Virus record (IMG/VR): IMGVR_UViG_3300009034_000001
Location: 1 to 64,000 of that record
Direction: 5' to 3' (one strand)
DNA length: 64,000 nt
Position 1 is the stretch's first letter, and each line of letters starts with the position of its first letter. A program made the translations under genes and the position numbers. The notes beneath the pieces were generated by a model. That model ran no database searches and had not been told where the DNA came from. It saw only the letters and a list, made by a program, of their open reading frames with translations. This document shows, in pieces, positions 1 to 23,454 of this stretch.

Positions 1-1865
<1,865 letters not shown>

Positions 1866-6582: not shown

Positions 6583-7317
6583 CTATTTAGACTTTTTTTT
6601 CAAAAACATTTCCAGAGCAGCTTGTTTAATACATTTGGTATATCTCGACCACATACCTTCTTTCTTACAATAACTTCGTACTTTCTTGATGTTGTCATCC
6701 TTTACTAAATGATGCTCACATCCTATGCACTTCTTAATAATCCTTTTGTGTCGCCTAAGACTGGATTCCTTGCACATATTAACAAAGTTTTTGAATATTA
6801 CCGAGCCGCATTTACTAAGTTCCGGATGAAACTGAACACCATATATGGGTAATGTTTCATGTTTTATGCCGGCAATTTGGCAACGATGTGTCTTGGCTAT
6901 AATCATGAAACGTTTAGGCTTCGTCAAAATACTATCTCTATGAAACATCCATACCACTTCGGTCTTATTCAGTTCTTTAAAGAGTGGAACGTGTACTATC
7001 ATGGATACATCAACATAGCCATACTCAGCCCTTATTCCAACATGGCTGTGATGCATAACTGCAACCAATTGAGCACCTAAACAAATACCCAATACCGGAA
7101 CATTTAATTTAAAAATTTTATGGTCAATCAAATGAGGTTGAACACTTGGAATATCACCAAGACTACCGGACAGGATGAGTCCTGCAACGTGATGTGTATT
7201 TGACAAAGGTGCAACTGGGTCAACAATCATAGGTTTTCCGCCTGCATGAAAAACTCGTTCTGCTACTAATTGTGCATAAACATTTGCAAAGTTTAAGACC
7301 AAAATATGTTTCTGCAT
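6583..7317 (-). CDS. GMP synthase-like class I glutamine amidotransferase subunit with Cys-rich C-terminal extension
   Basis: GICLGAQ nucleophile, AEYG, VWMFHRD and GVQFHPE (His-Glu); no ATP-PPase domain. Confidence 0.88.
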   Translation of the reverse strand: MQKHILVLNFANVYAQLVAERVFHAGGKPMIVDPVAPLSNTHHVAGLILSGSLGDIPSVQPHLIDHKIFKLNVPVLGICLGAQLVAVMHHSHVGIRAEYGYVDVSMIVHVPLFKELNKTEVVWMFHRDSILTKPKRFMIIAKTHRCQIAGIKHETLPIYGVQFHPELSKCGSVIFKNFVNMCKESSLRRHKRIIKKCIGCEHHLVKDDNIKKVRSYCKKEGMWSRYTKCIKQAALEMFLKKKSK

Positions 7318-7330
7318 ACTAGGCCACCAA

Positions 7331-8515
7331 TTAAGACCAATCCCAACACATTATATTTTGAGTAGTATGGTAGTCTTCCATATAATTTGGATCACTGCCT
7401 TTCCTAATAATTACATCACATGCTTGTTTATCTTCGGGTATTACAATCTCCCCTTCCTCTTTACCAAGTTTGTTCCTTTCCGCTTCGACATCTAAAACCA
7501 ACTTTTGAAACGAAAAGAAATTTGTGTTGTGTGTAGTACCAAAAGCGTGTCGCATCATATGGAATCCAACATGTCGCAAGAAAGCCCTACACTTTATTCC
7601 CTCTTCAAGTGATTCGGAATTTAAGTATGGCTGATGAGTACTACCTGCAGACTGCATAGCTGGAAGTTTGGTTACCTCCATATTTAGATGTGCCATCGCT
7701 GCATTCATCATTGCGTGCTGTATTGATCCAAACATCATATAATAATTCTTCGTGGGACAAGGAAAACCATAGTGAATACAAGTTACCTCCGGGCAGACCG
7801 TCTGAGCGACAACAATCATAAACAAGACTTCGGCATGGCAAAGAGTGAGAAGGCCCTCTGGCGTCTGCGGTGCGTTTGTCCCAGACATAGGCATAGTACT
7901 TAAACCCAGGTTAGCACCTAATCTTGCACTCCTAACAATGCCGCCCATCTTTTCTGGGATTTCAGTCAGCGGTGACTCAACGCCACAAAAGATATGAACC
8001 CAATCCGGACTAACAAATTGACTTACCTCTTTATCACCCATCTCTGCCATCGAAATACCTTTCAGGAAGTCATTTGGCAGGTTATCATGCATTATTCGAG
8101 CCATTCTATACAGGTTACCATTTGGCACTCCAATTGGGGTATGGCTAAATTTAATTACATCGGTATTATTAGCAATATAATCTACCGCCCATTTTAGATC
8201 TGTATAAGTCGCTGGACGAACTTCCTGATTTATAAAATAACCTTCTTCATGTATAGCAGGCTTCTCTTCAATCAATTGTAATCGACCACCAAGCCCAAAG
8301 GAGTTTCTGCCCGGATCAACTTTCAGTTTCTTTGGCGCTCGGTCTATACATTCCTGCGTATAATCTTTCAGTATATGGATGTGCCCCGTTTTCTCATCGT
8401 AGCCGGCCATACCAGTACCTTCTAAGATAGTTCTAATGTCCTTTGAGAACAGTTTGAAGCCTGCCTCTTCAAGGACTTTCTTTGCGTTACTGTGAATCCT
8501 TTCGTACGTTTGCAC
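7331..8515 (-). CDS. MttB (trimethylamine methyltransferase) superfamily protein, no pyrrolysine codon
   Basis: RIHSNAKKVLEEAG N-terminus, SPL, MPMSGTNAPQTPEGLLTLCHAEVL, FGS, FSFQKLVLD, YMEDYHT. No in-frame TAG. Confidence 0.82.
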   Translation of the reverse strand: MQTYERIHSNAKKVLEEAGFKLFSKDIRTILEGTGMAGYDEKTGHIHILKDYTQECIDRAPKKLKVDPGRNSFGLGGRLQLIEEKPAIHEEGYFINQEVRPATYTDLKWAVDYIANNTDVIKFSHTPIGVPNGNLYRMARIMHDNLPNDFLKGISMAEMGDKEVSQFVSPDWVHIFCGVESPLTEIPEKMGGIVRSARLGANLGLSTMPMSGTNAPQTPEGLLTLCHAEVLFMIVVAQTVCPEVTCIHYGFPCPTKNYYMMFGSIQHAMMNAAMAHLNMEVTKLPAMQSAGSTHQPYLNSESLEEGIKCRAFLRHVGFHMMRHAFGTTHNTNFFSFQKLVLDVEAERNKLGKEEGEIVIPEDKQACDVIIRKGSDPNYMEDYHTTQNIMCWDWS

Positions 8516-9319: not shown

Positions 9320-10081
9320 CTATATCTTGCTCAGAATCTCAACGCCGTTTTCTGTTATAGCAACACAATGCTCAAAATGAGCTGACAAATTGCTATCTTT
9401 GGTCACCACCGTCCAGCCATCGGAAAGTATCTCTACCTCGCTCGTGCCAACATTTGCCATGGGTTCAATAGCCAAAATCATTCCATACCTCAAACGTGGT
9501 CCGTGTCCGGGCTTACCAAAGTTTGGAATCTCGGGTGCTTCATGAAGTGACTTACCGATACCGTGGCCCACAAATTTTCTCACTACTGAAAATCCTTTAG
9601 ACTCTATGTATTCCTGAATAGCAAATGATATGTCAGAAACTCTATTGTTATCTACAGCCTTTTCGATACCTAAGTAAAGCGCCTGTTCGGTTGCCTCTAT
9701 TAAAAGAGCAGTCTCTTTTGAAACTACACCCACCGGTACGGTAATAGCGGCATCTCCAAAATATCCATCGTACAATACGCCAAAGTCAAGACTAATAATA
9801 TCTCCATCTTTTAATATTCGTTTAGAAGGTATACCATGTACCACCTCTTCGTTAACCGAAGTGCATAAACTATGAGAGTATCCCATGTAACCTTTAAATG
9901 CAGGAAACGCACTCATCTCCATGCAAAGCCTCTCACAACGATCATTTAATTCTATTGTTGTAACACCGGGCTTTACTAAAGATTTAATTGCGTCCAGTAT
10001 CTCTGCAACAATAGCATTACTTTTCCTCACCCTCTCAATCTCCGAAGGAGATTTTAAGATAATCAGTTTCTTGGTATCCAT
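9320..10081 (-). CDS. map: Type I methionine aminopeptidase
   Basis: CTSVNEEVVHGIP, SLDFG, GDAA, GHGIG..LHE.P, AIEPM, SAHFEH; all metal ligands present. Confidence 0.97.
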   Translation of the reverse strand: MDTKKLIILKSPSEIERVRKSNAIVAEILDAIKSLVKPGVTTIELNDRCERLCMEMSAFPAFKGYMGYSHSLCTSVNEEVVHGIPSKRILKDGDIISLDFGVLYDGYFGDAAITVPVGVVSKETALLIEATEQALYLGIEKAVDNNRVSDISFAIQEYIESKGFSVVRKFVGHGIGKSLHEAPEIPNFGKPGHGPRLRYGMILAIEPMANVGTSEVEILSDGWTVVTKDSNLSAHFEHCVAITENGVEILSKI

Positions 10082-10484: not shown

Positions 10485-10970
10485 TCATTTTTGTTCTCCT
10501 TTAGAACAACTTTGTTCGATAATGCTAGTGGTGGAAGCTCCCTTTACATAATGTAAGCTTATAACCTCGCCGCCATGATTCTTAACAACGTCGGCTCCAA
10601 TAATGTTCTCCACTGACCAGTCGCCACCTTTCACCAGCACATGAGGTACAAGCGACTCAACCACTCTCAGGGGATCCAATTCATCAAAAATTACCACACT
10701 GTCAACACATTGAAGTGCAGCCAATACCTCTGCCCGCTCATCTTGAGGAACCAAGGGTCTTCCCTCGCCTTTTATGGCTCTTGCGGAGCTATCACTATTT
10801 ATGGCTACAATCAGATGATCACCACAGGTCTTAGCTTCTGCAAGATATCGAACATGGCCTACATGTAAAATATCAAAGCAGCCATTGGTAAGAACGACGT
10901 GCTTTCCCTCACCCTTGAGTTGGACAACTAAACGTTTCAACTCTTCTAAGCTTTTAATCTTCTTTCTCAT
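10485..10970 (-). CDS. rfaE2: D-glycero-beta-D-manno-heptose 1-phosphate adenylyltransferase (HldE C-terminal domain)
   Basis: TNGCFDILHVGH, NSDSS..KG.GRP, LVKGGDW, GASTT. Confidence 0.92.
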   Translation of the reverse strand: MRKKIKSLEELKRLVVQLKGEGKHVVLTNGCFDILHVGHVRYLAEAKTCGDHLIVAINSDSSARAIKGEGRPLVPQDERAEVLAALQCVDSVVIFDELDPLRVVESLVPHVLVKGGDWSVENIIGADVVKNHGGEVISLHYVKGASTTSIIEQSCSKGEQK

Positions 10971-11997
10971 AATCTGAACAATAACCTCTTACACTTTTCA
11001 CACTTTTAAATTTTCCAAAACATGCGACGGCGTATTAGCCATTTCCATTTAGAAACTCGCATGCTAGTTCCTGGCTCAGTTGACCCACGTTGTCTCATTC
11101 TATAACGAATTGCAAGTCCTCTATCCTGTGTAAGTTTGTCCTGACAAATGACGGTTCGATGAGTTGTAATTAGACTTCCTCCTCAGTATGCCTGTGGAAG
11201 AAGTTTTATTGTCAACCTTATACCAACAGAATAAAAGTAGTCGACAAAGCCACCATTTCCACTTAGGCACAACATGATTATCAATGCAGTAAACAAAGTC
11301 ATATCCAACAAATTCAGGTTCACCTAAGCTCATATCTCATTTCCTCCATTTTTAGTGCTAGTGTGAGCGCTTTTTACAACGACCTTGTGATTCTTTATAA
11401 AGAAATGAATCACATCATTACATTTAGCACACTTAAAACTAATCCTTGTGAAGTCACCATTCATGTCACACGAGAATGGAATTAGAAAGCCTTTGCATGT
11501 AAATGGTGGCTTCCTCTCCACTATCCTCTCACAGACAGCATGATAGTAGTAAGTGTTCTCAACACTTTTTATGGGTTTGAAGTACATTTCTACATGCCTC
11601 CTTTATAATCAATGGTCTTATCTCAACTTTAGTTTAATAAGCCAGAACGGAACAACAATTGGCCACAGAAGAGGAATCAGTCCGAAGAATACAATTTTAA
11701 AACCTAACCTAAGATCGCCCGGACCAAGTGCTCCCCAGAGTATATAAAACAATAACAAGCAGCCCAAGGTCACGCAAACTCCGATACCATAGACAATTCC
11801 GCCTAAGAACAGTAAAGTTTCAAACATTCCGTTAATTCTCCTTTCGTTTACGACGCGTTCTTTTATCTTTTGAAACAGACCGCCCGGTAGAGAAATCCTT
11901 CAATGCACTAAGATCAGCCTGACGATAAAGATAATTACTTGAATTTATATCATCCCAAGTCAAATCCGTTGGACCTGGTTTTCTAACTATAAAGAAT

Positions 11998-12747
11998 CTA
12001 ATCATGACCAACAGCCTCCTTTAGATCTATACTTAGTCTATCCATGGTTACAAAGTACTCTCTTAAACAGTTGCCACAATGCCGACAGGCTGTTGTACCT
12101 AGTGCACCTTCCATCTTACCACATGAGTAAACCCATTTATTAAACTTATATCTCGACATCACACGTTCCCATGCCTTGGTTGTAATTGCCCAATAAGAAT
12201 TTAAAGTACGTTTACGGAATGTATAATTCCTTTTATGCCTAGCAGGAATAGTTTGAGTAAAGTAAGCCATAAAGGTAAGTATAATAGGTACTCCTAATAT
12301 GCCGTAGTAGCTTACTACCATGTCAACTAAATGTAAATTCCAAGTATTAGTTCTTACTCTAACAAACATTAAGTTCTTTGGAGGAACAACATAGTAAGCT
12401 TCACTATCGGTCATCTCCCCCGGGTTAACTGTAAGAACTACAGGTGCATCAAACTTGTCAAGGAAAAGAGGGATTGCAGTATTGTAGAATTTTTGAGGAA
12501 AGTGTGAAACATCCTTCATTACAAGATGCATATTAACAGAACTATCATTGCCATCATTCACTCTAACGACTCTATGTCCTACTTGTTCTAATGTTGGCAT
12601 GTTAGGTAAGTTTTCTGTAAGTGGTTCAAGGTAAGATCGTCCTGACTGAAAGAAACAATCTTCACACTTATTTGGACATGTTCCCTTTTGAGGAATACAA
12701 CAAATAATTCCACTGTCTACAGTCTTTGGATTCACTTTATAAGCCAT
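11998..12747 (-). CDS. Radical-SAM-like Fe-S protein
   Basis: CPNKCEDC (CxxxCxxC) near the N-terminus; second Cys cluster SC...CRHCGNC. Confidence 0.6.
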   Translation of the reverse strand: MAYKVNPKTVDSGIICCIPQKGTCPNKCEDCFFQSGRSYLEPLTENLPNMPTLEQVGHRVVRVNDGNDSSVNMHLVMKDVSHFPQKFYNTAIPLFLDKFDAPVVLTVNPGEMTDSEAYYVVPPKNLMFVRVRTNTWNLHLVDMVVSYYGILGVPIILTFMAYFTQTIPARHKRNYTFRKRTLNSYWAITTKAWERVMSRYKFNKWVYSCGKMEGALGTTACRHCGNCLREYFVTMDRLSIDLKEAVGHD

Positions 12748-12752
12748 AGTTC

Positions 12753-13166
12753 TTAATACCTCCTCTTCTTACAACCTTTACACGGCTTCTTTTTCTGAGC
12801 GTCAACTGCGGAAACATCCTCAATCAGATCTTGTTTTTCTAGTTCCTGTATGGATTCCTGCCCATGGTTAAAAACATTAACAGTAGTAGACGCTTTTCTT
12901 ATGCCTTCTACTACAGCTGATGTTATTAACTCACAAAGTTCTTCCTTTCCACATGCAAACTTATACTCAAACGTTCGACCCCCTGAAACATTGTAAGGCT
13001 TACTTGTAGGCGGTTGAGGCCGCGGATAATATTTTTGTAAATCACATTTGCTACAAGCTTGGGTTTGTAAACAACATTGTCTTCGAAAGTATCCTAGCAA
13101 CTTAGGTCTACTTTCCGAAAGACAGCTACCACTAACACCAAGATAGATACAGTTAATTCTTCTCAT
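12753..13166 (-). CDS. Hypothetical Cys-rich protein
   Basis: 137-aa ORF with several CxxC motifs. Confidence 0.6.
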   Translation of the reverse strand: MRRINCIYLGVSGSCLSESRPKLLGYFRRQCCLQTQACSKCDLQKYYPRPQPPTSKPYNVSGGRTFEYKFACGKEELCELITSAVVEGIRKASTTVNVFNHGQESIQELEKQDLIEDVSAVDAQKKKPCKGCKKRRY

Positions 13167-13468
13167 CGATATTCACCCCCGTTGGATTTCTGTCAATTAC
13201 TTTACTTACTACAACGGTCCTTCCAACATTTTCAAGTGGCATTAGAGGTAAGTTTATCAACAGGTTATCCTTATCTTCATCAATTACAATTACCTGTATG
13301 GCGTCTTCAAAACTCTTCGGTCCCCTACGGATCAACTTGGAGTACCGAGGAACGAAAAATGAAACCATACCATCATTTACGGTTGATATGGAAACGGCGT
13401 ACTCCTCTGGAAACTGACCGGAAGTAATTACACACCCTATCCAACTTTTTCTCATACAAAAAAACCTC

Positions 13469-13864
13469 CTAAGCGGGGGGACCGGAACTGTTGATACCCT
13501 CGAACGTATTGGATACTTTAAAGTTTGATCTTTCACCAATTCCAGGTTTAGACTCAAAAACTGACCTGACTTTCTTAACGACGGATCGGAACGCACATTT
13601 GCCAAGTGGAAGGAGTAACAACAACATAGTTACGCCTGTTATTATCATGAAGTATTCAAGATACAACATGGTATAATAAACCTCCGCATGAGCATACACA
13701 TAATCCGCGCCCGGATAAAACTTTGGAAGGTTCCAAAACCATGCTCCCCACTGAGATGCAGATACCCTTGCACCTGTAATGCCATAATGACAAAAGGGCG
13801 GGAAAATAGTGGCAGCAAAAAGTGGCGCTAAGTAAGCTAAAATAGCTAGTATTAATTTCTTCAC
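13469..13864 (-). CDS. Membrane protein
   Basis: Two hydrophobic segments; GGAGGTGA RBS. Confidence 0.65.
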   Translation of the reverse strand: MKKLILAILAYLAPLFAATIFPPFCHYGITGARVSASQWGAWFWNLPKFYPGADYVYAHAEVYYTMLYLEYFMIITGVTMLLLLLPLGKCAFRSVVKKVRSVFESKPGIGERSNFKVSNTFEGINSSGPPA

Positions 13865-14677
13865 TTCATCACCTCCTAAACAATTCCTTTATACCCTTCA
13901 GTAGCAAAGTACTTATGTTTAACTTTCCAAATTGCTTTAACTAGTTCATCACACGCAGGCTTGTTGGGACAGCCTTTACAGAAGTCGGGTGCCTTGCCAA
14001 TGTAAAATTCTCCGGCCAAGCACTTCAACAACTTCTTAAGCTTAGTGCTCTGACTTGGCCTACGGGGCTTAAGAACTCTCTCAGCCGTCATACAAGCTTC
14101 TTCACATTCTTCAATTAGTTGCTCATCTAATAGCTCATCCATCACTTAATAGCCTTTTCCTTAATTAATTGAGTTGCCATCGTCAATCATGGTTCCAACC
14201 TTCGAATGTGATCGGCAACGATATCAGCTAACTCATCAAACGAGATGCCAAAGTGTACAGTCAAATCCTTAAAGGTCATCTCAAGACTATGAATGTGACC
14301 ACATAGAACTTCGCCAAAATCGAAACTCCTACAGCCAATAACAGGTATTAAACAATTTCCATGTTCTTTTACAATTCTTTTTCTAAGTTTATCAACTCGT
14401 TTCATGTTTGATATCAGTTACATGCAACAAGGCATCACAGTAGATTTTCTGCAACCTTATTTTAATTGGACAACCTTTCAAGTGTGTGTTGAAGTGAATG
14501 CAACACTTCAAAGTTTCAAGTGAATCAATGGTACGCCTTCCTTCATAAACACTACAATTAAAGATTCTTCCAGCACCAATATGTGCTAAACATGTTGCAC
14601 GCCCATGATCGTCTTGATATGTACCTGGCAATTCACAATACCAACAGAATGCAGCTGCTATTTTGTTATCCATATAT

Positions 14678-15049
14678 TTACTCCTCCTTAGCATGCAGCC
14701 TTAACAATATATTTAAAAATTTAACGCCTTTAGCAAAGGAATAAGTGACAATATTACTTATTTCTTCAGCAAACTTGAGGTACTTATCATCCTTTTCATT
14801 AACGAAAATGATGAATTTTCCTTTAGCCTCCGCTCGGCTAATTTCAATACAAAGGCCATAGCCACCTGGATTTGACTTTTCCAAGTATGCAAATAAGATG
14901 TCACATTCATCAACACCCTTTAAATCCTTCCTGAAAAAATTACCTGATTGCCATGACCGAGGATCCAGAAAAATACAACCGGGAACAGCTGTCATAACAA
15001 CATCTTGCCAATTTGAATGTAACCCGCCCGACAAGAAAACCTTTTTCAT
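14678..15049 (-). CDS. Nucleoside 2-deoxyribosyltransferase/hydrolase-like protein
   Basis: VFLSGG, DL..VDECD.LFA, G...E...A...GK motifs. Confidence 0.8.
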   Translation of the reverse strand: MKKVFLSGGLHSNWQDVVMTAVPGCIFLDPRSWQSGNFFRKDLKGVDECDILFAYLEKSNPGGYGLCIEISRAEAKGKFIIFVNEKDDKYLKFAEEISNIVTYSFAKGVKFLNILLRLHAKEE

Positions 15050-15509
15050 TTGTAACCTCCCATACGTAGATTAGTCTGACCTTCCGGCTTGGTTCAATGA
15101 TTCTCCAATATAGGTAATTCCCAATAAATTAGCGGCCAAAGCTACGGTTAGACTCCAAAACTGCCAACTACCCATACTCATAGTTCCCCACACGGTAGCA
15201 ACAAGAACAGTAGACACGACAGTCAGCATTAAAGTTCCTGTGTTCATATCAAACCTCCTCATTAAATAGACAAAATTTGATCCCAAAAACTATCGGACTT
15301 TTCTCCAAGTAACTTTTGGACTTTCTCACAGATCTCTAAGATATACTCCTTTGGTACATCTTCCCCCCTAAGCATTTTCCACAGCATTAGGTCACCTCTT
15401 AATACCTTTGATGCTCTTAGGTCATCCGGATCTCCCGAACGTTCTGCCTTTGCAATAAACATTAAGAGCTGCTGACTTAACTGTACTCTAATTTTATATG
15501 GAATTTCCA

Positions 15510-15827
15510 TTACCTTTTCTCCTCCTTAACCCCTTGTAGTATATATTTGAGAATCGATGTGTCACACGTCTTTTCTTTATAATATACATCTGAAGTCTCT
15601 TTATCTAAAATAAGAAGTGTGCGTCCATCTTGCAACATTATATCTCCCTCCTGTACAAAGTGACCACAGCAAGAACCCCGCATGTCAATTCCAGATTTCT
15701 GCAAAGCACAAACAATATCTGCAATACAACTATCTACCTTTGCGTCCTTCCAACGGTCCTTACCGGTACATGACAAATCGGCTGGCACCTTAACTCTTAC
15801 CGGTTTTATAGTTCCACACTTACACAT
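15510..15827 (-). CDS. SCxGH-motif protein, copy 3
   Basis: VDSCIADIVCALQKSGIDMRGSCCGH..GDIMLQDGRTL; clear paralog of 8999..9292. Confidence 0.65.
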   Translation of the reverse strand: MCKCGTIKPVRVKVPADLSCTGKDRWKDAKVDSCIADIVCALQKSGIDMRGSCCGHFVQEGDIMLQDGRTLLILDKETSDVYYKEKTCDTSILKYILQGVKEEKR

Positions 15828-16687
15828 GGCTACTCTAACCTCCTGGGGGTCACTTTCCTGGTTATTGAATCAAAGGTCATTTCATACTCCGGGATCGGAC
15901 CGGAACCATTGTATTCCTCAAATTTGTTCCAGGTTGCAATATAAAACAACAAATCGTTCGGAAAACAAAAATGTAAAAATCTTTCAATAACTGAAATGCC
16001 ATTTTCCTCCAATATCTTTTCAAGTTCGTTGCCGCTTCCGTGAGTCAGAAAACACATGGAAACCTTAAATTTGCCAATTTTCATTTTACAACTCCTCTTT
16101 AGCTCTTCTCACGTTTGAGCAAATACTGTAACTTTGCAATACGTTTGAGCATACTGGTGAATTCTCTAATTACTTCCGGATAGTGCGTTATGAGTTCTGA
16201 AGCAATTCGACGTGCTTCACAAACGTTCTTGACATGATCAAGTGACAAGGATTGTTCCTTGCTCGCCTTGAACCTTGCTAGTGTACAGGCAATAATTTTA
16301 ATCAAAATTGGCTGATCTGACCAAAGTTCCGCATGATTTTTGTTAAGCACAATGGTGACACCTCTCTTCAACTTTTGTACAAATAGGCTTTCCTAGTACA
16401 GAAACAATGCTTTGAACATGAATAATAAATTTCCGTATCGGCAAAAAAGCTGTAAACGCCGCCTCGCCAGTTGAGTTTCCGCTTTAACACGGGACTACAA
16501 TACGCATAGCATTCATTAAGACAACAAAAGCACCATTTTTCCCATCGCCAGTGGAAGTTTTTTCCTATACACTGCTTAAATAAAGTTGGAAAGTACTTCC
16601 GTAAAACTCGTTGCCATTTTGGTGTGTAGCCACTACAACCCATATGTTTACCTCCTTATTAACACTCTGAGACTTAAGACTTAACCA

Positions 16688-16939
16688 TTAATCAATACAA
16701 ACAATACGACGACGTGATTCTTCAGCTTCCCTAACGCTTTCATTATGTTTATGATGTTCATACATCCGATTAGTATGATCTTTTTCTTCCTTAAGTAAGT
16801 GTTTAAGTGCGCTTATTCTCTGTTCAAGTTGTAAACATCGTTTATCTTTTTCTTCCTTAAGTAAGTGTTTAAGTTCTCTTATTCTCTGTTCAAGCTTTAA
16901 ACAACGTTTACAATTACTGTCTTTCATATCCATTACCAC
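16688..16939 (-). CDS. Coiled-coil protein with a 22-aa (66-bp) tandem duplication
   Basis: KRCLxLEQRIxxLKHLLKEEKD occurs twice. Confidence 0.7.
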   Translation of the reverse strand: MVMDMKDSNCKRCLKLEQRIRELKHLLKEEKDKRCLQLEQRISALKHLLKEEKDHTNRMYEHHKHNESVREAEESRRRIVCID

Positions 16940-18168
16940 CTTTCTAATAAGTAAGACTTTTCTTTCTCAAAGATTAAACATTCATCTTCAACAAACTCTT
17001 CCACCTGCTGAACTGACATACGACAAGTAGCATTAACGAAATGTAAGGTTTTTCCTAAGTACAACGGAATGAGCGAATTAGTAATATCTGTACGACTCAT
17101 TAAGTCTTTCTTGTAAGCAATGGCAAAATCAAACAATATTTTTGCCCACAAGGTTGTTGGGAAATTAAAACGCTTAAGAAGCCCCTTTATCTTTAATAAC
17201 TCATTATAATTGTTGGAATCAATCACCGTCGACCAAGTGTTCTCGAAATCGGCAAACCCTTGAACAAACTTCTTGAGTAAAATTTCCTTATCTACCTTCA
17301 CAACAGGGGGCCGTTCAATTTGGCCAAGTCCAAAACCAAAGATGGGCGTTGGCTTACTGGATTTAACCTGTTTCCAAACGTCCTCAAAGTGAGTCATTAA
17401 ATTAAAAAGCGTTCCTACCACCTCTTGGAACATAGCGCCTAAATGCAAGCCTGGATCCTTTGTATTATGAATCTTTGGTCTGCCTAAGAAAGTTTGACAA
17501 ACTTTTGCCCCTTTGTTAATAGCTAATGTGGTCATCCAAATATCAATTCCAAACTTTGAAACTCTTTCATTCCAACATCCCACCGAATGATCATCCAATC
17601 GGCACTCATTTACAAAGGCTTTAACAAGGTTCCCTGAGAAACCGAAGTCGCCAGCAATAGGTTGTCTGACTCTCATTCCATATAACATTCGAGTTAACGG
17701 ATAAGCAAGGTTATTTGTAATTGTGCCATCATACTTATGTCTAACATAAATTGGTATAACATAATCAAAACCGGAAAATAGTGGTCCACCTAAGTATTGT
17801 ATCCACCTGGGCATAATGCTCATTAGATCTGCATCAATCACAATTACAGCCTTAGCCTGTAACATATGTGCTTGAAAAAATAAGTTCTTCAGATTTATTC
17901 CTTTACCTTTAACCCCGGACTTTGTTGATAGATAAATCTTGGGGGTCTTTGTAGCTACTTTCAAGAACACGTCCTTAGTATTATCAAGCGAACAGTTATC
18001 ACAGTTAATAATAACAGCAGATTTGTCACCAAAGAATCTAACTAGGCCATCATCCACTCGTTTGGTTGGAAACCCTATTTTGTCAGCCTCATTAAATGAA
18101 GGTATGCCAACAACCAACTCAGCACATTCAATACCACTTGGATTTTCAATGTAATCCATATCATTCAT
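16933..18168 (-). CDS. GT-A glycosyltransferase, glucosylglycerate/mannosylglycerate synthase-like
   Basis: VVGIPSFNE, GKG, DAD, P.YVRHKYDGTITN, RQPIAGDF, FGIDIWMTT. Confidence 0.8.
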   Translation of the reverse strand: MNDMDYIENPSGIECAELVVGIPSFNEADKIGFPTKRVDDGLVRFFGDKSAVIINCDNCSLDNTKDVFLKVATKTPKIYLSTKSGVKGKGINLKNLFFQAHMLQAKAVIVIDADLMSIMPRWIQYLGGPLFSGFDYVIPIYVRHKYDGTITNNLAYPLTRMLYGMRVRQPIAGDFGFSGNLVKAFVNECRLDDHSVGCWNERVSKFGIDIWMTTLAINKGAKVCQTFLGRPKIHNTKDPGLHLGAMFQEVVGTLFNLMTHFEDVWKQVKSSKPTPIFGFGLGQIERPPVVKVDKEILLKKFVQGFADFENTWSTVIDSNNYNELLKIKGLLKRFNFPTTLWAKILFDFAIAYKKDLMSRTDITNSLIPLYLGKTLHFVNATCRMSVQQVEEFVEDECLIFEKEKSYLLERW

Positions 18169-18908
18169 GTCAGTTCACCTCAACTTAAAGGAACCATTTA
18201 ATAAATTTAACCGCATAGTAAAAAATACAGCAACAGGTTACAAAAGCGGCAGAAAGAAGACAAACAAACTTAAAGACCAATCGTGGATCCGATTTACATA
18301 ACTCTTTATATCTTCTTTCCTCCTCAGACTTTTTCACTTCCTATGGTACCTTCCAAACGCTTGTGTCAATACAATGTGCACCATACTCAATCAAGTTCAT
18401 TACAAAAATTTGACATAGCCAACTATCGTCACAATGTTTACACTTCTCTAAGCCAATTAAATCTTCCGATTCTATCATATATTTGACGCACTCAGTAAAG
18501 CAATCTTTTTTTTCCAAAAACGACTCCAGGCCTTGCTTCAAACAATATCTTCTAAATTCCTTACCTTCCATATGTCACACACCCCCGTCTGACAAAGTGA
18601 AATGACCTACCAGCCATGAAATTCCTCCAAAGGGTTGTCACGTTTAAACTCTTTCCCTTTGGTATGAGACTTTTTCTTAAGCACTACTAAGATACAATAA
18701 TTGATACTACCACAAGATAACATACATCTGTCGAAACGTAAAGCCACAATATTCCAATCACTTTTTAATTTAGCCAATTCAGACGCTGCAATACCCGGTA
18801 CTGTAGATTCAATTATACGTATATCATCAAAAGCAAAACCGTCACTGGACATAAAGAACCCCCTGATTATACTAATATGCAAATAAAAAAACTTGACTGA
18901 ATAGACAA

Positions 18909-19862
18909 TTAACCTACGGGTTTGAATCGTTGGTGCTCTAATGCTTCCTCTAATTCATTTTGAAACACAACAGACGTCATACCTTTCAATACCGCCAAAC
19001 TACCAGCCACAACTGCAATCTTAGTGGCATCACTTAAACTCTTTCCTGAGCCAATACTCAAAGCTAATGCAGCAACAACAACATCACCTGCGCCACAAAC
19101 GTTTGTAACCTCACTTGTAATAGATGGAAAATGTTTCGGATTGAAATTTGATTTCTCATGTAGATACAAACCATCCGCATTTGCCTTGACAATAACAGCA
19201 TCTAAACCCAACATTTCAATCAGAGCTTTCGGATTTGAAAACCCTTCAGAACAGGCAACAGTCAACTCTTTCCGATTCGGTGTCAACAAGTTAGCATTGG
19301 CATATTTGCTAAACTCAACTTTAGGGTCCACAATTACAAAATTGTTATTTCGTCTTGCACGCGTTGATGTATTAAAGCAGACATCTCTTGTGACTACGCC
19401 TTTGGCATAATCCGACACAACTACAATACCATCATTTATCATGTAATCCTCAACGCGTTGCAACATTTGTTCCTCTTCCGCTTCGGTCAGTACGCCGGGA
19501 CTCTCTTGATCAACACGGAGCAGTTGTTGCTGACGTGCTACAAATCTTAACTTACGGGTGGTCTTTCTGGTTGGACTGATAACACATCGGTCTACAATTT
19601 CACCATCATTTAGTAAACCTTTTAAAAGTTCTCCGTCGTCATCCGGACCCCTTAATCCAATCAGTTCAACTGACTCCGCACCAAGAGATATTAAATTTGC
19701 AGCAACATTTGCAGCTCCACCTAACATATAAAGTTGTGACTTTTCCCGGAAGACGGGCACCGGCGCTTCGGGAGAAATTCGATTCACTAATCCAAACGCC
19801 CAATGATCCAACATACAATCTCCAAGACACAACACTTTAATATTTTTCCTAAACAAACTCAT
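18909..19862 (-). CDS. rfaE1: D-glycero-D-manno-heptose 7-phosphate kinase (HldE N-terminal, PfkB family)
   Basis: GD.MLD, RISPEAPVPV, GGAANVA, QQLLRVD.E, SDYAKG, VDPK, TPN..E, GAGD. Confidence 0.92.
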   Translation of the reverse strand: MSLFRKNIKVLCLGDCMLDHWAFGLVNRISPEAPVPVFREKSQLYMLGGAANVAANLISLGAESVELIGLRGPDDDGELLKGLLNDGEIVDRCVISPTRKTTRKLRFVARQQQLLRVDQESPGVLTEAEEEQMLQRVEDYMINDGIVVVSDYAKGVVTRDVCFNTSTRARRNNNFVIVDPKVEFSKYANANLLTPNRKELTVACSEGFSNPKALIEMLGLDAVIVKANADGLYLHEKSNFNPKHFPSITSEVTNVCGAGDVVVAALALSIGSGKSLSDATKIAVVAGSLAVLKGMTSVVFQNELEEALEHQRFKPVG

Positions 19863-19876
19863 AACTTATACCTCCC

Positions 19877-20506
19877 TTATCCTCTATAACCAAGTTTCTT
19901 TAACGTTTTCCAACTCTTACGCACAAAGTAGGGTAAAGGCTTACCCATGTTTATTTGATCCTGTAGCCACGTCCTAGTCAATGGACTGGAAGGATAACCA
20001 GAGCCAAAGTCACCATAACGTTTATGTAGGTTTTCAACAATTGAATCGCGCGTTGTCTTTGCAAGGATAGAAGCGGCAGAAACAACAGGATACGTGTTAT
20101 CAGCGTTACTTTCAGCAACAATTTCCACATCAATATCAGACGGAAATAAAGATTCAAGCACGATCTTAAACCTTTTCGGATTGCCAGGAGCATCGATAAA
20201 GACTTTATCGGGTCTTAAAAAATAAATTATGCTTGACATAATCTGGGCTTCAAGTAAGTCCAACTGATGTTGTCTTACGAAATTATCAATCACAACAGGC
20301 CACACTGGTAGTATAATACTACCATCAGCAATCAATTCAATTTCTCCCCGCAAACTAGTTCTTCGTTTACGTGATAGTCGTTTTGAATCCCGGACGCCAA
20401 GTTTAACTAACTTTGATTCATCTTTAATATTTAAAAATACTCCAGACACGACTAACGGACCCAATACTGGACCACGTCCCGCTTCATCAATACCGCATAT
20501 AATCAT
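19877..20506 (-). CDS. rnhB: Ribonuclease HII, archaeal/eukaryal-like
   Basis: GIDEAGRGPVLGP, GVRDSK.L, IDA, VSAASILAK, GDFGSGYPS. Confidence 0.93.
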   Translation of the reverse strand: MIICGIDEAGRGPVLGPLVVSGVFLNIKDESKLVKLGVRDSKRLSRKRRTSLRGEIELIADGSIILPVWPVVIDNFVRQHQLDLLEAQIMSSIIYFLRPDKVFIDAPGNPKRFKIVLESLFPSDIDVEIVAESNADNTYPVVSAASILAKTTRDSIVENLHKRYGDFGSGYPSSPLTRTWLQDQINMGKPLPYFVRKSWKTLKKLGYRG

Positions 20507-20856
20507 TTTTGGTGTCCTTTCTTGTACCTATCAGGTACTTTTCTTTCAGAAATGCCCCGATTAATTTTTGCACAAAAGTTATTATAAGTATCCTTATAAA
20601 CCCACGCGTCATCAAATCCATACATTTCTAAGAAAGATTTCACCTTATTGTAGTTTGAACACATTACCTTCCAGAAAAATTGAACATGTTTGGGAGGTAC
20701 TTTGTCAAACCAGGCATAAATACTTAAGTTACCTTGTGAAGCAAACCGGACGGAATCTTCAAATTGAGCAAACTTAAAATACTTTACTTTTGCCCATTTA
20801 GAACATTTACTATCTGGTTTAGTTGTAATAATGTTTGAATCTTCTTTATCAGTCAT
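20503..20856 (-). CDS. Hypothetical protein
   Basis: ATGA overlap with rnhB. Confidence 0.65.
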   Translation of the reverse strand: MTDKEDSNIITTKPDSKCSKWAKVKYFKFAQFEDSVRFASQGNLSIYAWFDKVPPKHVQFFWKVMCSNYNKVKSFLEMYGFDDAWVYKDTYNNFCAKINRGISERKVPDRYKKGHQK

Positions 20857-21165
20857 AAAATTAACCTTATAATTTCAGGGACTTCAAACTTGGAAAGTTT
20901 ATACACTTAGCCCCTACCCGTCACTTGCCTATTTGGTAAACCGGGTGACAAGACCGAAATAAGACGTTTCTGGAAGTACAACACTGATAACAACACAGAA
21001 ATTATCATGTCGTCTTTGTCAAAATCCTGCCCACCTGAACAAACATGCTGCATAGCTTCCTCATATTCAGCATTCATTAATCTCCCACATCGCCAGCATC
21101 TAACCTTCTGTGTTGAAAAGCTTTTGGGTGCCATAAACTTATCCTCCTTATGTGCAAACCTTTTT

Positions 21166-23454
21166 CTATGCTTCCATCAGTCTTGACAATTGATCAATCA
21201 ACATTTTAAGTGACGTCCTCAGAGGGTGTCCCTCTGGCAACATGTCAATTGTAACTTCGAAGTATTGTCTACTTAACCTTAAGTAATAAAAGCCCAGCTC
21301 TTTGGCGGGGGCGTAAAATTGAGACTCCAAGCCTAATGCTTTCTTTAATAACTTCTCCGCTTCCGGGTCAAGCGAATTTTGTTCAATTAAATGTACGGCC
21401 ATGGAAAACCAAGGACGTGGATCCTTGGGAGACTTTTCGGCCATTTTCTGATACATGGACCAATAGTGATCAAGTTTCTTCCCAACGTCCACCTTCGGCT
21501 TGAGATATCCAAAATGATCCACCACCGTTCTTGATCGATGCACATCCAAATTCAACTTATGCGCGCAGTAGTCAACTGTTTCATGAACGTGGCCAGTATA
21601 TTCCATCTTTTGTGGATTCCTCATGAGCCTAATTGTTTCCGAAAAGGATGGCTTACTTGCTTGAGGTATCCAATTGTGTACACTGAAACAGAAACAATCT
21701 ACGTGTGGATTATCCAATTGTCGATTCAATATTCTTAAATCGTGTATCCGTTCGTCGATATCAAGATGCTGAAACCATGGAGTTGAAACCTCCTTAAGAA
21801 TTTTATTACGACAAACGTCAAAGCCATCATCAATTGATCCAGTTAAAATCCTTACATTGTATAATTGTGCTAACTCGATGGAGCCATCTGTACTTCCCGT
21901 ATCTAACAGAATAACTTCGTCAAAGAAAGCAGACGCAATTTTTAAATATTCATCAAGGATGCCAACTTCATTTTTCATTACCGATCCAACAGTACATTGA
22001 GCATCTTCCGAGAAGTGTGAAATTTTAACATCTGTATCAATCAAGAACTTGTAATCTTTATCTCCCGCCAACATTGGATCAGGATTTGGATCGAGCTTTG
22101 TATAAAAGTCAAATTTCTTCCTCCTCATTTCCTCGGTCAAGTATCCAAAATGTTTAATTCTAATTGAACTTTGTGCATGATACTCAATAGGATAATAAGG
22201 CACATTTCCTACGTGTATCTTTGTATTCTTGTGACCTCGGTCCTTCCACCAATCAATTTTACATCCTTTATACACTTTACAAATACGAGGCATATCTGCA
22301 AAACCAAAGTGCTTATCGGTTCGATAGTTATTTTCATCATTCCACATTGTATAATACTGTAACCTTAAACAAAGCGTCTCCGGCGAAAGTTTCCTTAACA
22401 TCTGTTCAATATACATTCGGTCAACCTTATCCTCAGGAATTTCATCTGCATCTATCGACCATAACCAATTGCAACTATGCTGAATAGTAGCCAAATCAAC
22501 CAAATCCTGCCGTTGATCAAGTTCATCTTTCCTTTCCTTATCCTTATAGTAGATAATATTATCATATCTCCGGAGGACCAAGGTGATATCTAATGGAGAA
22601 TCATCATCCAAGATAAATATCCAATCTCCAATTTGTGACATCTTTTTAATCGATTTGTCAAACAACTTCAACTCATCTTGGTCTTCAATCCTGACGCGGT
22701 ACATAACACCTAATACTAAAGGTTCTTCTTTAACCTTCTGTCTCCAACGTTTTAAAAACGGAATTCTTGAACTACCACCAATCATATCCCACTGTGGTGG
22801 CAATGCCACACCGCGCCTAAACACATATCCATCGGAACATACGTAGGAATGGAAACCAGCAAGGTATAAACGTAAAATGAAATCCACATCCTCAACACCT
22901 TCATAAAGTTCTTCAACGAAACCGTTAACAGCATCAAAAGCTGACTTCTTAACAAACATACAAAAACTGGTTAAGTAACCCACTTCCCAAAAACGAGGAA
23001 AGCCCTTTGAATGTAGCTTGTCCTGAACCGATTGCACATTATCTGCAGTTGCACCTCTCAAATCAAGTCGTTGCTGACCAGGTACGTTGTTGCACAACGG
23101 TCCTATTGCTCCAACGGGAGCACGTAGCTGCAAACCGACGTCTTCAATAGCCATTTCCAATTGTTCAACAATGCCGCTAGGAAGTACAATATCATCAGCA
23201 AGAAACAAAATGTATTCGCCTTGTGCCTCTTTCGCACCGGCATTACAAGCTCCAGCCCTATTAAGGTTGGTTGCTTTTATAACCTTACCATCCGGAAGTG
23301 TGCTTACAAGTGTTTCAATAACCTTAACATTGTCAGGAGTACAATCAGCACAAACTACAATAACCTCCGCGGATGTAGACTTTAAACTCTCCAAACACTG
23401 AGTTAAGTGTGAAACGTTGTTACATGTTGGAACTACAATCGACGTTTGATTCAT
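21166..23454 (-). CDS. Multidomain glycosyltransferase (three GT2-like domains plus TPR-like C-terminus)
   Basis: SIVVPT...LADD...EDVDF; LDD.S...IDADE...HFGY; KNE...DTGSTDGS...LDIDE...VHE...HFGY; helical tail. Confidence 0.85.
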   Translation of the reverse strand: MNQTSIVVPTCNNVSHLTQCLESLKSTSAEVIVVCADCTPDNVKVIETLVSTLPDGKVIKATNLNRAGACNAGAKEAQGEYILFLADDIVLPSGIVEQLEMAIEDVGLQLRAPVGAIGPLCNNVPGQQRLDLRGATADNVQSVQDKLHSKGFPRFWEVGYLTSFCMFVKKSAFDAVNGFVEELYEGVEDVDFILRLYLAGFHSYVCSDGYVFRRGVALPPQWDMIGGSSRIPFLKRWRQKVKEEPLVLGVMYRVRIEDQDELKLFDKSIKKMSQIGDWIFILDDDSPLDITLVLRRYDNIIYYKDKERKDELDQRQDLVDLATIQHSCNWLWSIDADEIPEDKVDRMYIEQMLRKLSPETLCLRLQYYTMWNDENNYRTDKHFGFADMPRICKVYKGCKIDWWKDRGHKNTKIHVGNVPYYPIEYHAQSSIRIKHFGYLTEEMRRKKFDFYTKLDPNPDPMLAGDKDYKFLIDTDVKISHFSEDAQCTVGSVMKNEVGILDEYLKIASAFFDEVILLDTGSTDGSIELAQLYNVRILTGSIDDGFDVCRNKILKEVSTPWFQHLDIDERIHDLRILNRQLDNPHVDCFCFSVHNWIPQASKPSFSETIRLMRNPQKMEYTGHVHETVDYCAHKLNLDVHRSRTVVDHFGYLKPKVDVGKKLDHYWSMYQKMAEKSPKDPRPWFSMAVHLIEQNSLDPEAEKLLKKALGLESQFYAPAKELGFYYLRLSRQYFEVTIDMLPEGHPLRTSLKMLIDQLSRLMEA

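What the first reader, a model, noticed from the sequence alone, without database searches (positions are those of the whole stretch)
10485..19862. Both halves of HldE (ADP-heptose synthesis) carried as separate phage genes
Seen: the heptose-7-P kinase (18909-19862) and heptose-1-P adenylyltransferase (10485-10970) lie 8 kb apart among phage ORFs with intact motifs; no gmhA or gmhB is in the window. Inference: retention of two unlinked steps suggests selection for an NDP-heptose supply, possibly the donor for the GT island or for LPS/S-layer remodelling.
Basis: partly seen in the sequence, partly recalled or inferred. Interest (0 to 1): 0.6.

Follow-up and report, generated by a model that had tools for sequence, protein, structure and literature searches.

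The report
Phage-encoded ADP-heptose supply genes
A 241-kb sediment phage, probably of Syntrophaceae bacteria, carries separately acquired genes for three of the four steps that make the sugar donor ADP-heptose plus two heptosyltransferase-type enzymes, a richer but not new example of phages bringing their own glycan-building genes.

Summary
ORF 18909-19862(-) is a stand-alone heptose-7-P kinase (HldA type) and ORF 10485-10970(-) a stand-alone heptose-1-P adenylyltransferase (HldC type). Both keep every family-invariant residue.

The window is the first 64 kb of a closed 241-kb jumbo phage, which changes the picture. A genuine gmhA lies at 113 kb and two GT9 (heptosyltransferase-family) genes at 75 and 81 kb. 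No GmhB or other HAD phosphatase and no clear HldD exist.

The two genes are not halves of a split HldE:
- HldC is 79-80% identical to a stand-alone HldC paralogue of a Syntrophaceae MAG and nests in that clade, with dN/dS about 0.11.
- The kinase is at most 43% identical to anything, 38% to that MAG's HldE, and sits on a very long, unplaced branch.

Independent capture and retention support selection for an ADP-heptose supply. The likeliest consumers are the phage's GT9 enzymes, not the GT2-rich island. The acceptor is unresolved: host envelope glycan or virion proteins.

The kind is known. Cyanophage heptose gene clusters have been reported since 2005, and IMG/VR holds at least 565 HldC-like stretches, usually fused to or beside the kinase. 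Verdict: a new member of a known kind, of moderate interest.

The parts
10485..10970 (-). [quoted passage not shown]
   Evidence: TIGR02199 scores 188.5 bits, over its cut-off of 181.5. PDB 5x9q HldC, E 1e-32. All 41 invariant columns kept. 79-80% identical to the stand-alone Syntrophaceae HldC and placed in that clade with SH-aLRT 96. dN/dS 0.11.
18909..19862 (-). [quoted passage not shown]
   Evidence: TIGR02198 scores 273.7 bits, below the cut-off of 345; the next family scores 73.5. PDB 4e84 HldA, E 5e-45. All 55 invariant columns kept, including RISPEAPVP and GAGD. Best identity to any protein is 43%. Terminal branch 1.59 against a median of 0.15, with no supported placement.
16933..18168 (-). 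GT2 / mannosylglycerate-synthase-like glycosyltransferase, 411 aa, between the two heptose genes
   Evidence: Pfam MGS_GT 28.2 bits and Glycos_transf_2 24.8 bits. GT2 hit in the genome scan.
21166..23454 (-). 762-aa protein with two GT2 domains; start of the glycosyltransferase/methyltransferase island
   Evidence: Pfam Glycos_transf_2 E 4e-26, two stretches. Two GT2 hits. 36% identical to a GT2 on the related glycan-island contig L187.
24112..30055 (-). Rest of the glycan island: three methyltransferases (24112-24696 weak, 24693-25376, 28675-29286), a Glyco_transf_7C-like GT (25383-26306), a GT-B Glyco_trans_1_2 GT (26322-27416), a weak GT2 (27862-28674) and a DXD Gly_transf_sug GT (29267-30055). 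It abuts the tail genes.
   Evidence: Pfam hits; GT2 scan; tail genes from 30 kb onward.

Best explanation
The phage carries its own partial ADP-heptose pathway and its own likely consumers.

Pathway: GmhA (G000:C1:113220-113987) would convert sedoheptulose-7-P to D-glycero-D-manno-heptose-7-P. The divergent HldA kinase (window 18909-19862) would phosphorylate C1. A host GmhB or another host phosphatase would have to remove the 7-phosphate, because the phage has no HAD phosphatase. [quoted passage not shown] No clear HldD is present, so the D,D-form may be used directly, or the host epimerase acts.

Consumers: the donor is most probably used by the two phage GT9 enzymes (C1:75339-76373 and 80520-81551). 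These belong to a glycan-building programme of at least 10 glycosyltransferases, several methyltransferases, a Ugd-like dehydrogenase, an SDR and a GH-A-like hydrolase.

Acceptor: my best guess is a host envelope glycolipid or glycan, either the LPS core or a lipid-linked surface polysaccharide intermediate. Remodelling it during infection could block superinfection or stop progeny adsorbing to debris. Virion proteins are the close second.

History: the pathway was assembled piecemeal. The kinase is an old, fast-evolving phage gene. HldC was captured much later from a Syntrophaceae-like host.

Shown: gene identities, conserved residues, gene histories, and the absence of GmhB, Wzx and an initiating transferase. 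Inferred: enzyme activities, the link to GT9, and the acceptor.
For: Identities and conserved sites.

GmhA: 167-173 bits to GmhA models, 59-65% identical to bacterial GmhA, PDB GmhA 152 bits against DiaA 118 with the H..E and QE.H...H motifs kept.

Closed genome: 98% complete, and the record's end repeats its start. No GmhB or HAD by four models.

Two GT9 genes over the Pfam cut-off, best NCBIfam LPS heptosyltransferase II/III. GT9b keeps the G-D catalytic site and the DSGxxH motif across 48 homologues. Its model (pLDDT 89) matches only ADP-heptose enzymes at the top: WaaF, 3tov, TibC, WaaC.

Bacterial stand-alone HldA genes most like the phage's sit next to an HldC-GmhA fusion and a GT9 in surface-polysaccharide clusters.

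Different histories: HldC 79-80% against kinase 38% to the same Syntrophaceae MAG; trees. Purifying selection on HldC, dN/dS 0.11.

Glycan module conserved on related phage-like contigs.

Precedent and the surface-alteration hypothesis in cyanophages: PMC1079782, PMC7378029, P-SSM2 cluster.
Against: No biochemical data exist, and no RNA run holds the phage.

The kinase and GmhA score below NCBIfam equivalog cut-offs.

The HldC donor is a second, stand-alone paralogue in a genome that also has a full HldE. The phage protein is only 50% identical to that HldE's adenylyltransferase domain. The paralogue's true substrate is unproven.

The genes are scattered at 10.7, 19, 75, 81 and 113 kb, so the link to GT9 is not supported by adjacency within this phage.

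Only 6 of 18 other large HldC-bearing viral records have a GT9 over the cut-off.

The GT9 N-terminal acceptor-binding halves barely match LPS enzymes, so an LPS-core acceptor is uncertain.

GT9 membership does not by itself prove a heptose donor.
Confidence: 0.6

Rival explanations
1. Virion glycosylation. The ADP-heptose is used by the Cys4-finger GT9 enzymes, together with the tail-adjacent GT/MT island, to heptosylate and decorate phage structural proteins in the cytoplasm. This would resemble TibC/AAH heptosylation of beta-helical autotransporters and the glycan shield of mycobacteriophage capsids and tail tubes.
For: The phage has no initiating phosphoglycosyl transferase and no Wzx flippase, so it cannot start an exported glycan by itself. 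The GT/MT island directly abuts the tail genes on the same strand. The GT9b model matches TibC at TM 0.64-0.65, as well as it matches the LPS enzymes. Four conserved cysteines lie late in the C-lobe, at a position like TibC's iron finger (PMC4358343). Virion glycosylation by phage GTs is documented in mycobacteriophages, as summarised in PMC12619734.
Against: TIGR04414 (Aah/TibC) scores 19.7 bits against a cut-off of 200, whereas LPS heptosyltransferase II scores 60.8. The Cys spacing differs from TibC. The model shows no N-terminal beta-barrel. LPS-core heptosylation also needs no phage flippase. No acceptor protein has been identified.
Confidence: 0.25
2. Different chemistry. The stand-alone HldC-like enzyme and/or the divergent kinase act on another sugar phosphate or nucleotide, so the product is not ADP-D,D-heptose.
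For: The HldC donor lineage is a paralogue that coexists with a complete HldE in the Syntrophaceae MAG. The kinase is below the equivalog cut-off and deviates at several nearly invariant positions, for example D254N and T261V. No GmhB or HldD is present.
Against: HldC is above the curated equivalog cut-off, and the next specific family scores 47 bits. The kinase keeps the HldA-specific RISPEAPVP flap and all 55 invariant columns. A genuine GmhA, whose only known product is heptose-7-P, is co-retained. GT9 enzymes are present.
Confidence: 0.1
3. Passenger genes. These are host-derived morons carried without selected function, and their co-occurrence is chance.
For: The genes are scattered among small ORFs of unknown function. 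The pathway is incomplete. No expression data exist.
Against: Every invariant residue is kept in both proteins despite a kinase terminal branch of 1.59 substitutions per site. dN/dS is 0.11. Three pathway steps plus two GT9 genes sit in one closed genome. The same gene set recurs in many viral contigs.
Confidence: 0.04
4. DNA hypermodification. Heptose or other sugars are attached to modified bases in the phage DNA.
For: Phage glycosyltransferases often glycosylate DNA, as noted in PMC12619734. A FolE2-like GTP cyclohydrolase lies next to gmhA, and a GluQRS-like gene overlaps GT9b.
Against: No TGT/DpdA-family gene and no thymidylate-synthase-family hydroxymethylase is in the closed genome. No DNA heptosylation is known to me; that point rests on my own knowledge.
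Confidence: 0.02

Closest known systems
Heptose/LPS gene clusters of T4-like cyanophages (P-SSM2, S-T4, SynMITS9220M01, etc.)
   Same: These are large lytic-type phages carrying a heptose-7-P kinase, an HldC-type nucleotidyltransferase and a phosphoheptose isomerase, and they generally lack GmhB (PMC1079782; PMC7378029). The proposed role is host-surface alteration.
   Different: In cyanophages the genes sit side by side in one cluster. Here they are 8 kb and about 100 kb apart and have different origins. Identity to the cyanophage proteins is only 24-29% for the kinase and 33-40% for HldC. The host is a Syntrophaceae-like anaerobe, not a cyanobacterium.
Stand-alone HldA and HldC of Burkholderia (PDB 4e84, 5x9q) and bifunctional HldE of E. 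coli
   Same: Same folds and motifs, and the best sequence matches among solved structures. They catalyse the same two reactions of the ADP-heptose pathway.
   Different: The phage kinase is about 40% identical at best and lies on a long branch. The cellular enzymes act together with GmhB and HldD, which the phage lacks.
Viral HldE/HldC genes in IMG/VR and huge-phage metagenomic genomes
   Same: At least 565 HldC-like stretches occur in viral contigs. Of the best 80 loci, 48 also have the kinase. One complete 64-kb virus has GmhA, HldE and GmhB.
   Different: In almost all of those the kinase and transferase are fused or adjacent. Only this phage has them unlinked. Its HldC clusters with bacterial Syntrophaceae genes, not with other viral HldCs.
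GT9 heptosyltransferases: WaaC/WaaF (LPS core) and TibC/AAH (protein O-heptosylation)
   Same: GT-B fold, an N-lobe G-D catalytic site and a C-lobe D-S-G-x-x-H motif. The top structural matches are exclusively these enzymes.
   Different: Scores fall far below the equivalog cut-offs of every named subfamily. The N-lobe is divergent. A compact conserved Cys4 finger (C-x2-C-x5-C-x8-C) is present, which E. coli WaaF lacks in the aligned region. Its spacing differs from that of TibC.

Membership tests
HldC / RfaE domain II (TIGR02199) | Whole-protein score above the curated equivalog cut-off | tested here: met
   188.5 bits against a cut-off of 181.5.
HldC / RfaE domain II (TIGR02199) | Nucleotidyltransferase HxGH motif and C-terminal S-T nucleotide-binding motif | tested here: met
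   H36-x-G38-H39, K114-G115-x-D117-W118 and G144/S146 are invariant and present. The protein aligns over residues 24-153 with HldC 5x9q.
HldC / RfaE domain II (TIGR02199) | Forms ADP-heptose from beta-D-heptose-1-P and ATP | not testable with these tools
   Needs an enzyme assay. One caveat: the nearest cellular relatives are a paralogue that coexists with HldE.
HldA / RfaE domain I (TIGR02198) | Whole-protein score above the curated equivalog cut-off | tested here: not met
   273.7 bits against a cut-off of 345. This is still the best family by 200 bits, so I file it as HldA-type and HldA-like in action, not as a strict equivalog.
HldA / RfaE domain I (TIGR02198) | PfkB catalytic motifs (GAGD with the catalytic Asp, TPNxxE) plus the family-specific RISPEAPVP flap | tested here: met
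   All 55 invariant columns of 19 HldA/HldE sequences are present. The protein aligns over residues 9-304 with HldA 4e84.
GmhA (TIGR00441 / NF010546) | SIS fold with catalytic/zinc residues (H, E ... Q, E, H, H); closer to GmhA than to DiaA | tested here: met
   DAQHxAxEF and QExHxxxGH are kept. GmhA 2xbl scores 152 bits against DiaA 118. The protein scores below the equivalog cut-offs, 167 against 209 and 173 against 276.
Complete ADP-L,D-heptose pathway (GmhA, HldA, GmhB, HldC, HldD) | GmhB heptose-1,7-bisphosphate 7-phosphatase present | tested here: not met
   TIGR00213, TIGR01662, PF13242 and PF13419 give no match in the closed 241-kb genome.
Complete ADP-L,D-heptose pathway (GmhA, HldA, GmhB, HldC, HldD) | HldD ADP-heptose 6-epimerase present | tested here: not met
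   Two SDRs score 66 and 117 bits against a cut-off of 274.6. They score better as dTDP-glucose dehydratase/UXS-like and TviC/GalE-like. On a related contig the first one sits beside a Ugd-like gene.
GT9 heptosyltransferase family (PF01075) | Pfam gathering score, GT-B fold, N-lobe catalytic Asp and C-lobe DSGxxH | tested here: met
   81.2 and 42 bits against a cut-off of 22. G55-D56, D245 and H250 are invariant in 48 homologues. The top fold matches are WaaF, 3tov, TibC and WaaC.
LPS heptosyltransferases I/II/III (TIGR02193/02195/02201) | Equivalog score and an N-lobe able to bind Kdo2-lipid A | tested here: not met
   Best scores are 60.8 and 43.1 bits against cut-offs of 134.6 and 170.2. 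Matches cover mainly the C-lobe.
BAHT protein heptosyltransferases (TibC/AAH, TIGR04414) | Equivalog score, N-terminal beta-barrel, iron finger Cys339/342/358/370 | tested here: not met
   19.7 bits against a cut-off of 200. The model has a disordered residues 1-25 followed by a helix, with no beta-barrel. A Cys4 cluster exists but with different spacing.

The most novel reading that the evidence does not exclude
The Cys4-finger GT9 subfamily found here and on related phage-like contigs is a phage-borne protein heptosyltransferase. Fed by the phage's own GmhA-HldA-HldC supply, it heptosylates virion proteins. That would be the first heptose-decorated phage particle and a viral counterpart of TibC/AAH autotransporter heptosylation.
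Probability: 0.15. Interest if true: 0.7.

Novelty: new member of a known kind. Interest (0 to 1): 0.35.

Why it matters
The finding adds an anaerobic-sediment jumbo phage, probably infecting Syntrophaceae, to the phages that carry nucleotide-heptose genes. Syntrophaceae are key syntrophs of methanogenic systems that have almost no known phages.

It also gives unusually clear evidence that such a pathway can be assembled and maintained gene by gene. An ancient, fast-evolving kinase, a mid-aged isomerase and a later host-derived adenylyltransferase all remain intact. That is a stronger argument for selection on the product than a single captured operon would be.

It points to GT9 enzymes with a conserved Cys4 finger as testable consumers. 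The missing phosphatase step recurs across phages, which suggests that host phosphatases are not limiting.

ADP-heptose is also an innate-immune agonist in animals. That has no bearing on this sediment phage, but it is relevant when similar genes turn up in gut viromes (one search lists human faecal phage contigs).

Tried and rejected
1. Selection test from natural variants. The sediment runs X1 and X2 were laid on window 16900-20900 (4001 letters, within the operators' limit). Only short contigs 100% identical to the window came back, with no variants, so no dN/dS for the kinase.
2. Expression. No RNA run holds the phage.
3. Conservation in related phages. A conserved 779-aa protein finds 206 viral stretches, but at 51% identity or less and mostly on contigs under 20 kb. 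Isolated phages give no match. Gene content of true relatives could therefore not be compared genome-wide. Only the glycan-module contigs L186 and L187 could be used.
4. GmhB. Four HAD/GmhB models were all negative.
5. HldD. Both SDRs were rejected as HldD.
6. DNA-modification use. No TGT/DpdA and no ThyA-family enzyme.
7. Self-contained exported polysaccharide. No WecA-type or WbaP-type initiating transferase and no Wzx.
8. DiaA-like replication role for the SIS protein. Rejected, because GmhA scores higher and the catalytic residues are kept.
9. LPS-type against TibC-type for GT9b by fold search. The TM-scores of 0.55-0.68 do not discriminate.
10. GmhA in the Syntrophaceae MAG. Not found with the phage protein as query, but the MAG is incomplete, so this says nothing.
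11. The Freeman et al. 2023 paper on virion glycosylation is not held. It is cited only through PMC12619734.

No alternative genetic code was used.
Full report
WHAT THE WINDOW IS. The window is the first 64 kb of G000:C1, a 241,415-bp IMG/VR virus record rated 98% complete. Its last roughly 44 bases repeat its first bases, so the assembly closes on itself. Absences can therefore be read with some confidence. Nearly all genes are on the minus strand and GC is 39.6%. The window holds a 2150-aa tape measure, tail proteins, a head protease and a major head protein. A glycosyltransferase/methyltransferase island at 21-30 kb abuts the tail genes. No tRNA genes are in the window. The same phage occurs as a 173-kb IMG/VR contig and at low depth in sediment metagenomes.

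THE OBSERVATION.

ORF 10485-10970(-), 161 aa, scores 188.5 bits on TIGR02199, the heptose-1-P adenylyltransferase domain, above the curated cut-off of 181.5. Its best solved relative is Burkholderia HldC 5x9q.

ORF 18909-19862(-), 317 aa, scores 273.7 bits on TIGR02198, the heptose-7-P kinase domain. That is below the equivalog cut-off of 345 but 200 bits above any other kinase family. Its best solved relative is Burkholderia HldA 4e84, E 5e-45.

Aligned with family samples, the phage proteins keep every invariant column. For HldC that is 41 columns, including TNGCFDxxHxGH and KGGDW. For the kinase it is 55 columns, including the HldA-specific RISPEAPVP flap, GGAAN, SDYAKG, TPNxxE and the GAGD catalytic motif. 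The kinase does depart at several nearly invariant positions, as expected for a fast-evolving copy.

THE REST OF THE PATHWAY. Searching the whole phage genome changes the picture.

A gmhA homologue lies at C1:113220-113987(-), next to a FolE2-like GTP cyclohydrolase, a dUTPase and a primase fragment. It is 59-65% identical to GmhA of Thermodesulfobacteriota and Nitrospirota. It scores higher against solved GmhA (152 bits) than against the paralogue DiaA (118 bits), and it keeps the H..E and QE.H...H active-site/zinc residues. It carries an extra N-terminal stretch of about 45 residues.

No GmhB is present. TIGR00213, the HAD-IIIA model TIGR01662, PF13242 and PF13419 all find nothing, while the control genomes respond.

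Neither of two SDR genes is a convincing HldD. One scores best as TviC/GalE-type. The other scores best as dTDP-glucose-dehydratase/UXS-type and sits beside a Ugd-like gene on a related contig.

So the phage encodes steps 1, 2 and 4 of the four steps to ADP-D,D-heptose. From established knowledge of the pathway (Kneidinger et al. 2002, recalled, not checked here), loss of gmhB in E. coli gives only a partial core defect. Dependence on a host phosphatase is therefore plausible. The P-SSM2 cluster likewise shows nucleotidyltransferase, kinase, isomerase and epimerase but no annotated phosphatase.

CONSUMERS. The genome holds two GT9 (heptosyltransferase-family) genes: GT9a at C1:75339-76373 and GT9b at C1:80520-81551. 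Both are over the Pfam cut-off. Their best NCBIfam families are LPS heptosyltransferases II and III, far below those cut-offs and mostly through the nucleotide-sugar-binding lobe. The only solved sequence relatives are WaaF and one other GT9.

In 48 single-domain homologues of GT9b the following are invariant or nearly so: the N-lobe G-D, the C-lobe D-S-G-x-x-H, an Arg, and four cysteines spaced C-x2-C-x5-C-x8-C.

An AlphaFold model (pLDDT 89) finds only ADP-heptose enzymes at the top of the PDB: WaaF, Veillonella GT9 3tov (TM 0.68), TibC (0.64-0.65) and WaaC (0.55). This does not separate an LPS-type from a protein-type enzyme. TibC's iron finger (Cys339/342/358/370; PMC4358343) has an analogous position but different spacing. 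The model lacks TibC's N-terminal beta-barrel, and the TibC/AAH model TIGR04414 scores only 19.7 bits.

THE WIDER GLYCAN PROGRAMME. The nearest GT9b relatives (38-40%) lie on phage-like contigs. These carry an HNH endonuclease, methyltransferases, GT2/GT8, a radical-SAM enzyme, Ugd and an SDR. They share a module with this phage: GT9 at 37-39% identity, a 381-aa protein at 56-58% (C1:76396-77541), the SDR at 49%, a Ugd-like protein at 56% and the 762-aa double GT2 at 36%. By language-model features and predicted structure the 381-aa protein looks like a clan GH-A glycoside hydrolase. That is a lead only.

Genome-wide the phage has at least ten glycosyltransferase genes: five GT2 proteins, two GT9, and one each of GT7C-like, GT-B Glyco_trans_1_2 and DXD-type.

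It has no WecA-type or WbaP-type initiating transferase and no Wzx flippase. It therefore cannot launch an exported lipid-linked glycan on its own. It has no TGT/DpdA and no thymidylate-synthase-family hydroxymethylase, so DNA glycosylation has no support.

TWO HISTORIES, NOT TWO HALVES.

The adenylyltransferase is 79-80% identical to a stand-alone HldC of Syntrophaceae MAGs. The context of that gene is plainly bacterial: proBA, rsfS, isocitrate/isopropylmalate dehydrogenase and an SLT-LysM transglycosylase, with contig GC of 43%. In a tree of 74 sequences the phage protein sits in an SH-aLRT-96 clade of ten with that group. The clade lies inside a Thermodesulfobacteriota assemblage and apart from all 18 viral HldCs sampled. 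Its terminal branch is 0.23. The best viral relative is only 52-54% identical. Against the Syntrophaceae gene, dN/dS is about 0.11 with dS about 1.5. The transfer is therefore not recent in absolute terms, and the protein has stayed under purifying selection.

The kinase, by contrast, is at most 43% identical to any of 5.8 billion proteins. It is 37-38% identical to the kinase domain of the same Syntrophaceae MAG's 491-aa HldE. Its terminal branch is 1.59 substitutions per site against a median of 0.15, and it has no supported placement.

One caveat follows. That MAG has both a full HldE and the stand-alone HldC paralogue, and the phage protein is only 50% identical to the HldE adenylyltransferase domain. 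The donor was therefore the second copy, whose physiological substrate is unproven.

HOW COMMON THIS IS. Tblastn against isolated phages finds the kinase in 16 records and HldC in 56. Most are cyanomyoviruses whose annotations already read ADP-heptose synthase, carbohydrate kinase and phosphoheptose isomerase. Huge metagenomic phages also appear.

Sullivan et al. 2005 described 24 LPS genes in P-SSM2 and proposed cell-surface alteration (PMC1079782). A later cyanophage announcement lists heptose kinase, isomerase and epimerase as host-acquired genes (PMC7378029).

IMG/VR holds at least 565 HldC-like stretches. Of the best 80 loci, 48 also have a kinase within 10 kb, almost always fused as HldE or adjacent. 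Only this phage has them about 8 kb apart.

Among 18 larger HldC-bearing viral records, 6 have a GT9 over the cut-off, 4 have a GmhB-like gene and 2 have GmhA. One complete 64-kb virus has GmhA, HldE and GmhB together.

In bacteria, the stand-alone kinases most like the phage's lie in surface-polysaccharide clusters. These have Wzx, a WecA-like transferase, methyltransferases and a fused HldC-GmhA protein, and in one cluster seen on two contigs a GT9 directly follows the kinase. That supports the functional link between these genes and GT9.

VERDICT.

Selection for an ADP-heptose supply is well supported. The evidence is independent capture, retention of all invariant residues, purifying selection, and co-retention of GmhA and GT9 genes.

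The genes are not halves of a split HldE. gmhA is present in the phage. The GT9 enzymes, not the GT2-rich island, are the specific candidate users.

The acceptor is unresolved. My estimates for the acceptor alone, separate from the confidences given for the whole explanations, are about 0.4 for a host envelope glycolipid or glycan remodelled during infection and about 0.3 for virion proteins.

The kind of system is known, so this is a new member of a known kind. Its noteworthy points are the piecemeal assembly, the Syntrophaceae-like host, and a Cys4-finger GT9 subfamily shared with related phage contigs.

The costly profile-library search was used once, on GT9b, because the family scans left its type open.

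Noticed in passing
window 61565-63904 (-) and L012:6419-8374 (-) = G000:C1:72418-74373: One PHROG family of unknown function (phrog_27227, 617 positions) is split between two genes about 10 kb apart. The 779-aa window protein matches profile positions 28-309 and the 651-aa protein matches positions 328-608. Relatives on other viral contigs cover about 560 query residues with matches spanning about 3.4 kb, which hints at inserted elements such as inteins or introns, or at further splitting.
   Followed up: partly
L001:2207-3010 (-) = C1:114001-114804; L012:13202-14524 (-) = C1:79201-80523: A FolE2-like GTP cyclohydrolase lies directly upstream of gmhA. A 440-aa protein with a GluQRS-like (tRNA glutamyl-queuosine synthetase) catalytic domain overlaps the stop/start of GT9b. 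No TGT/DpdA is in the genome, so the usual 7-deazaguanine route is not evident. Unexplained.
   Followed up: partly
L012:10397-11542 (-) = C1:76396-77541: This 381-aa protein has no Pfam or PHROG hit. It is the best-conserved member (56-58% identity) of the glycan module shared with contigs L186 and L187. The ESM Atlas places it with GH5/GH39/GH42-type TIM-barrel glycoside hydrolases (score 0.96, TM about 0.8).
   Followed up: partly
window 7331-8515 (-) and 6583-7317 (-): An MttB-superfamily (trimethylamine methyltransferase-like) protein, Pfam E 2e-20, sits next to a class-I glutamine amidotransferase. These are unusual auxiliary genes for a phage.
   Followed up: no
window 9320-10081 (-) and 19877-20506 (-): The phage encodes a methionine aminopeptidase (Peptidase_M24, E 1e-47). 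It also encodes an RNase HII that passes the TIGR00729 cut-off (186 bits), immediately upstream of the kinase.
   Followed up: no
L105:1450-2925 (+) and L093/L005: The Syntrophaceae MAG that holds the nearest HldC also has a full 491-aa HldE. The stand-alone HldC is therefore a second paralogue, lying between a ComF-like phosphoribosyltransferase and an SLT-LysM transglycosylase. Its role in the bacterium is unknown.
   Followed up: partly
L188:6989-8008, L189:7016-8023, L190:3407-4414: Bacterial surface-polysaccharide clusters encode a fused HldC-GmhA protein (CTP_transf_like + SIS, 335-339 aa) immediately upstream of a stand-alone HldA. In L189 and L190 a GT9 follows. This fusion architecture differs from the classical HldE.
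   Followed up: no
window 1-44 and G000:C1:241371-241414: The record's end repeats its start, so the genome is circularly closed or terminally redundant, although IMG/VR classes it as linear. The first ORF of the window (2-1498, open at the end) continues across the junction.
   Followed up: partly
L001:1426-2193 (-) = C1:113220-113987: The phage GmhA has an N-terminal extension of about 45 residues that bacterial GmhA (188-199 aa) lacks. The translated extension contains no internal Met.
   Followed up: no
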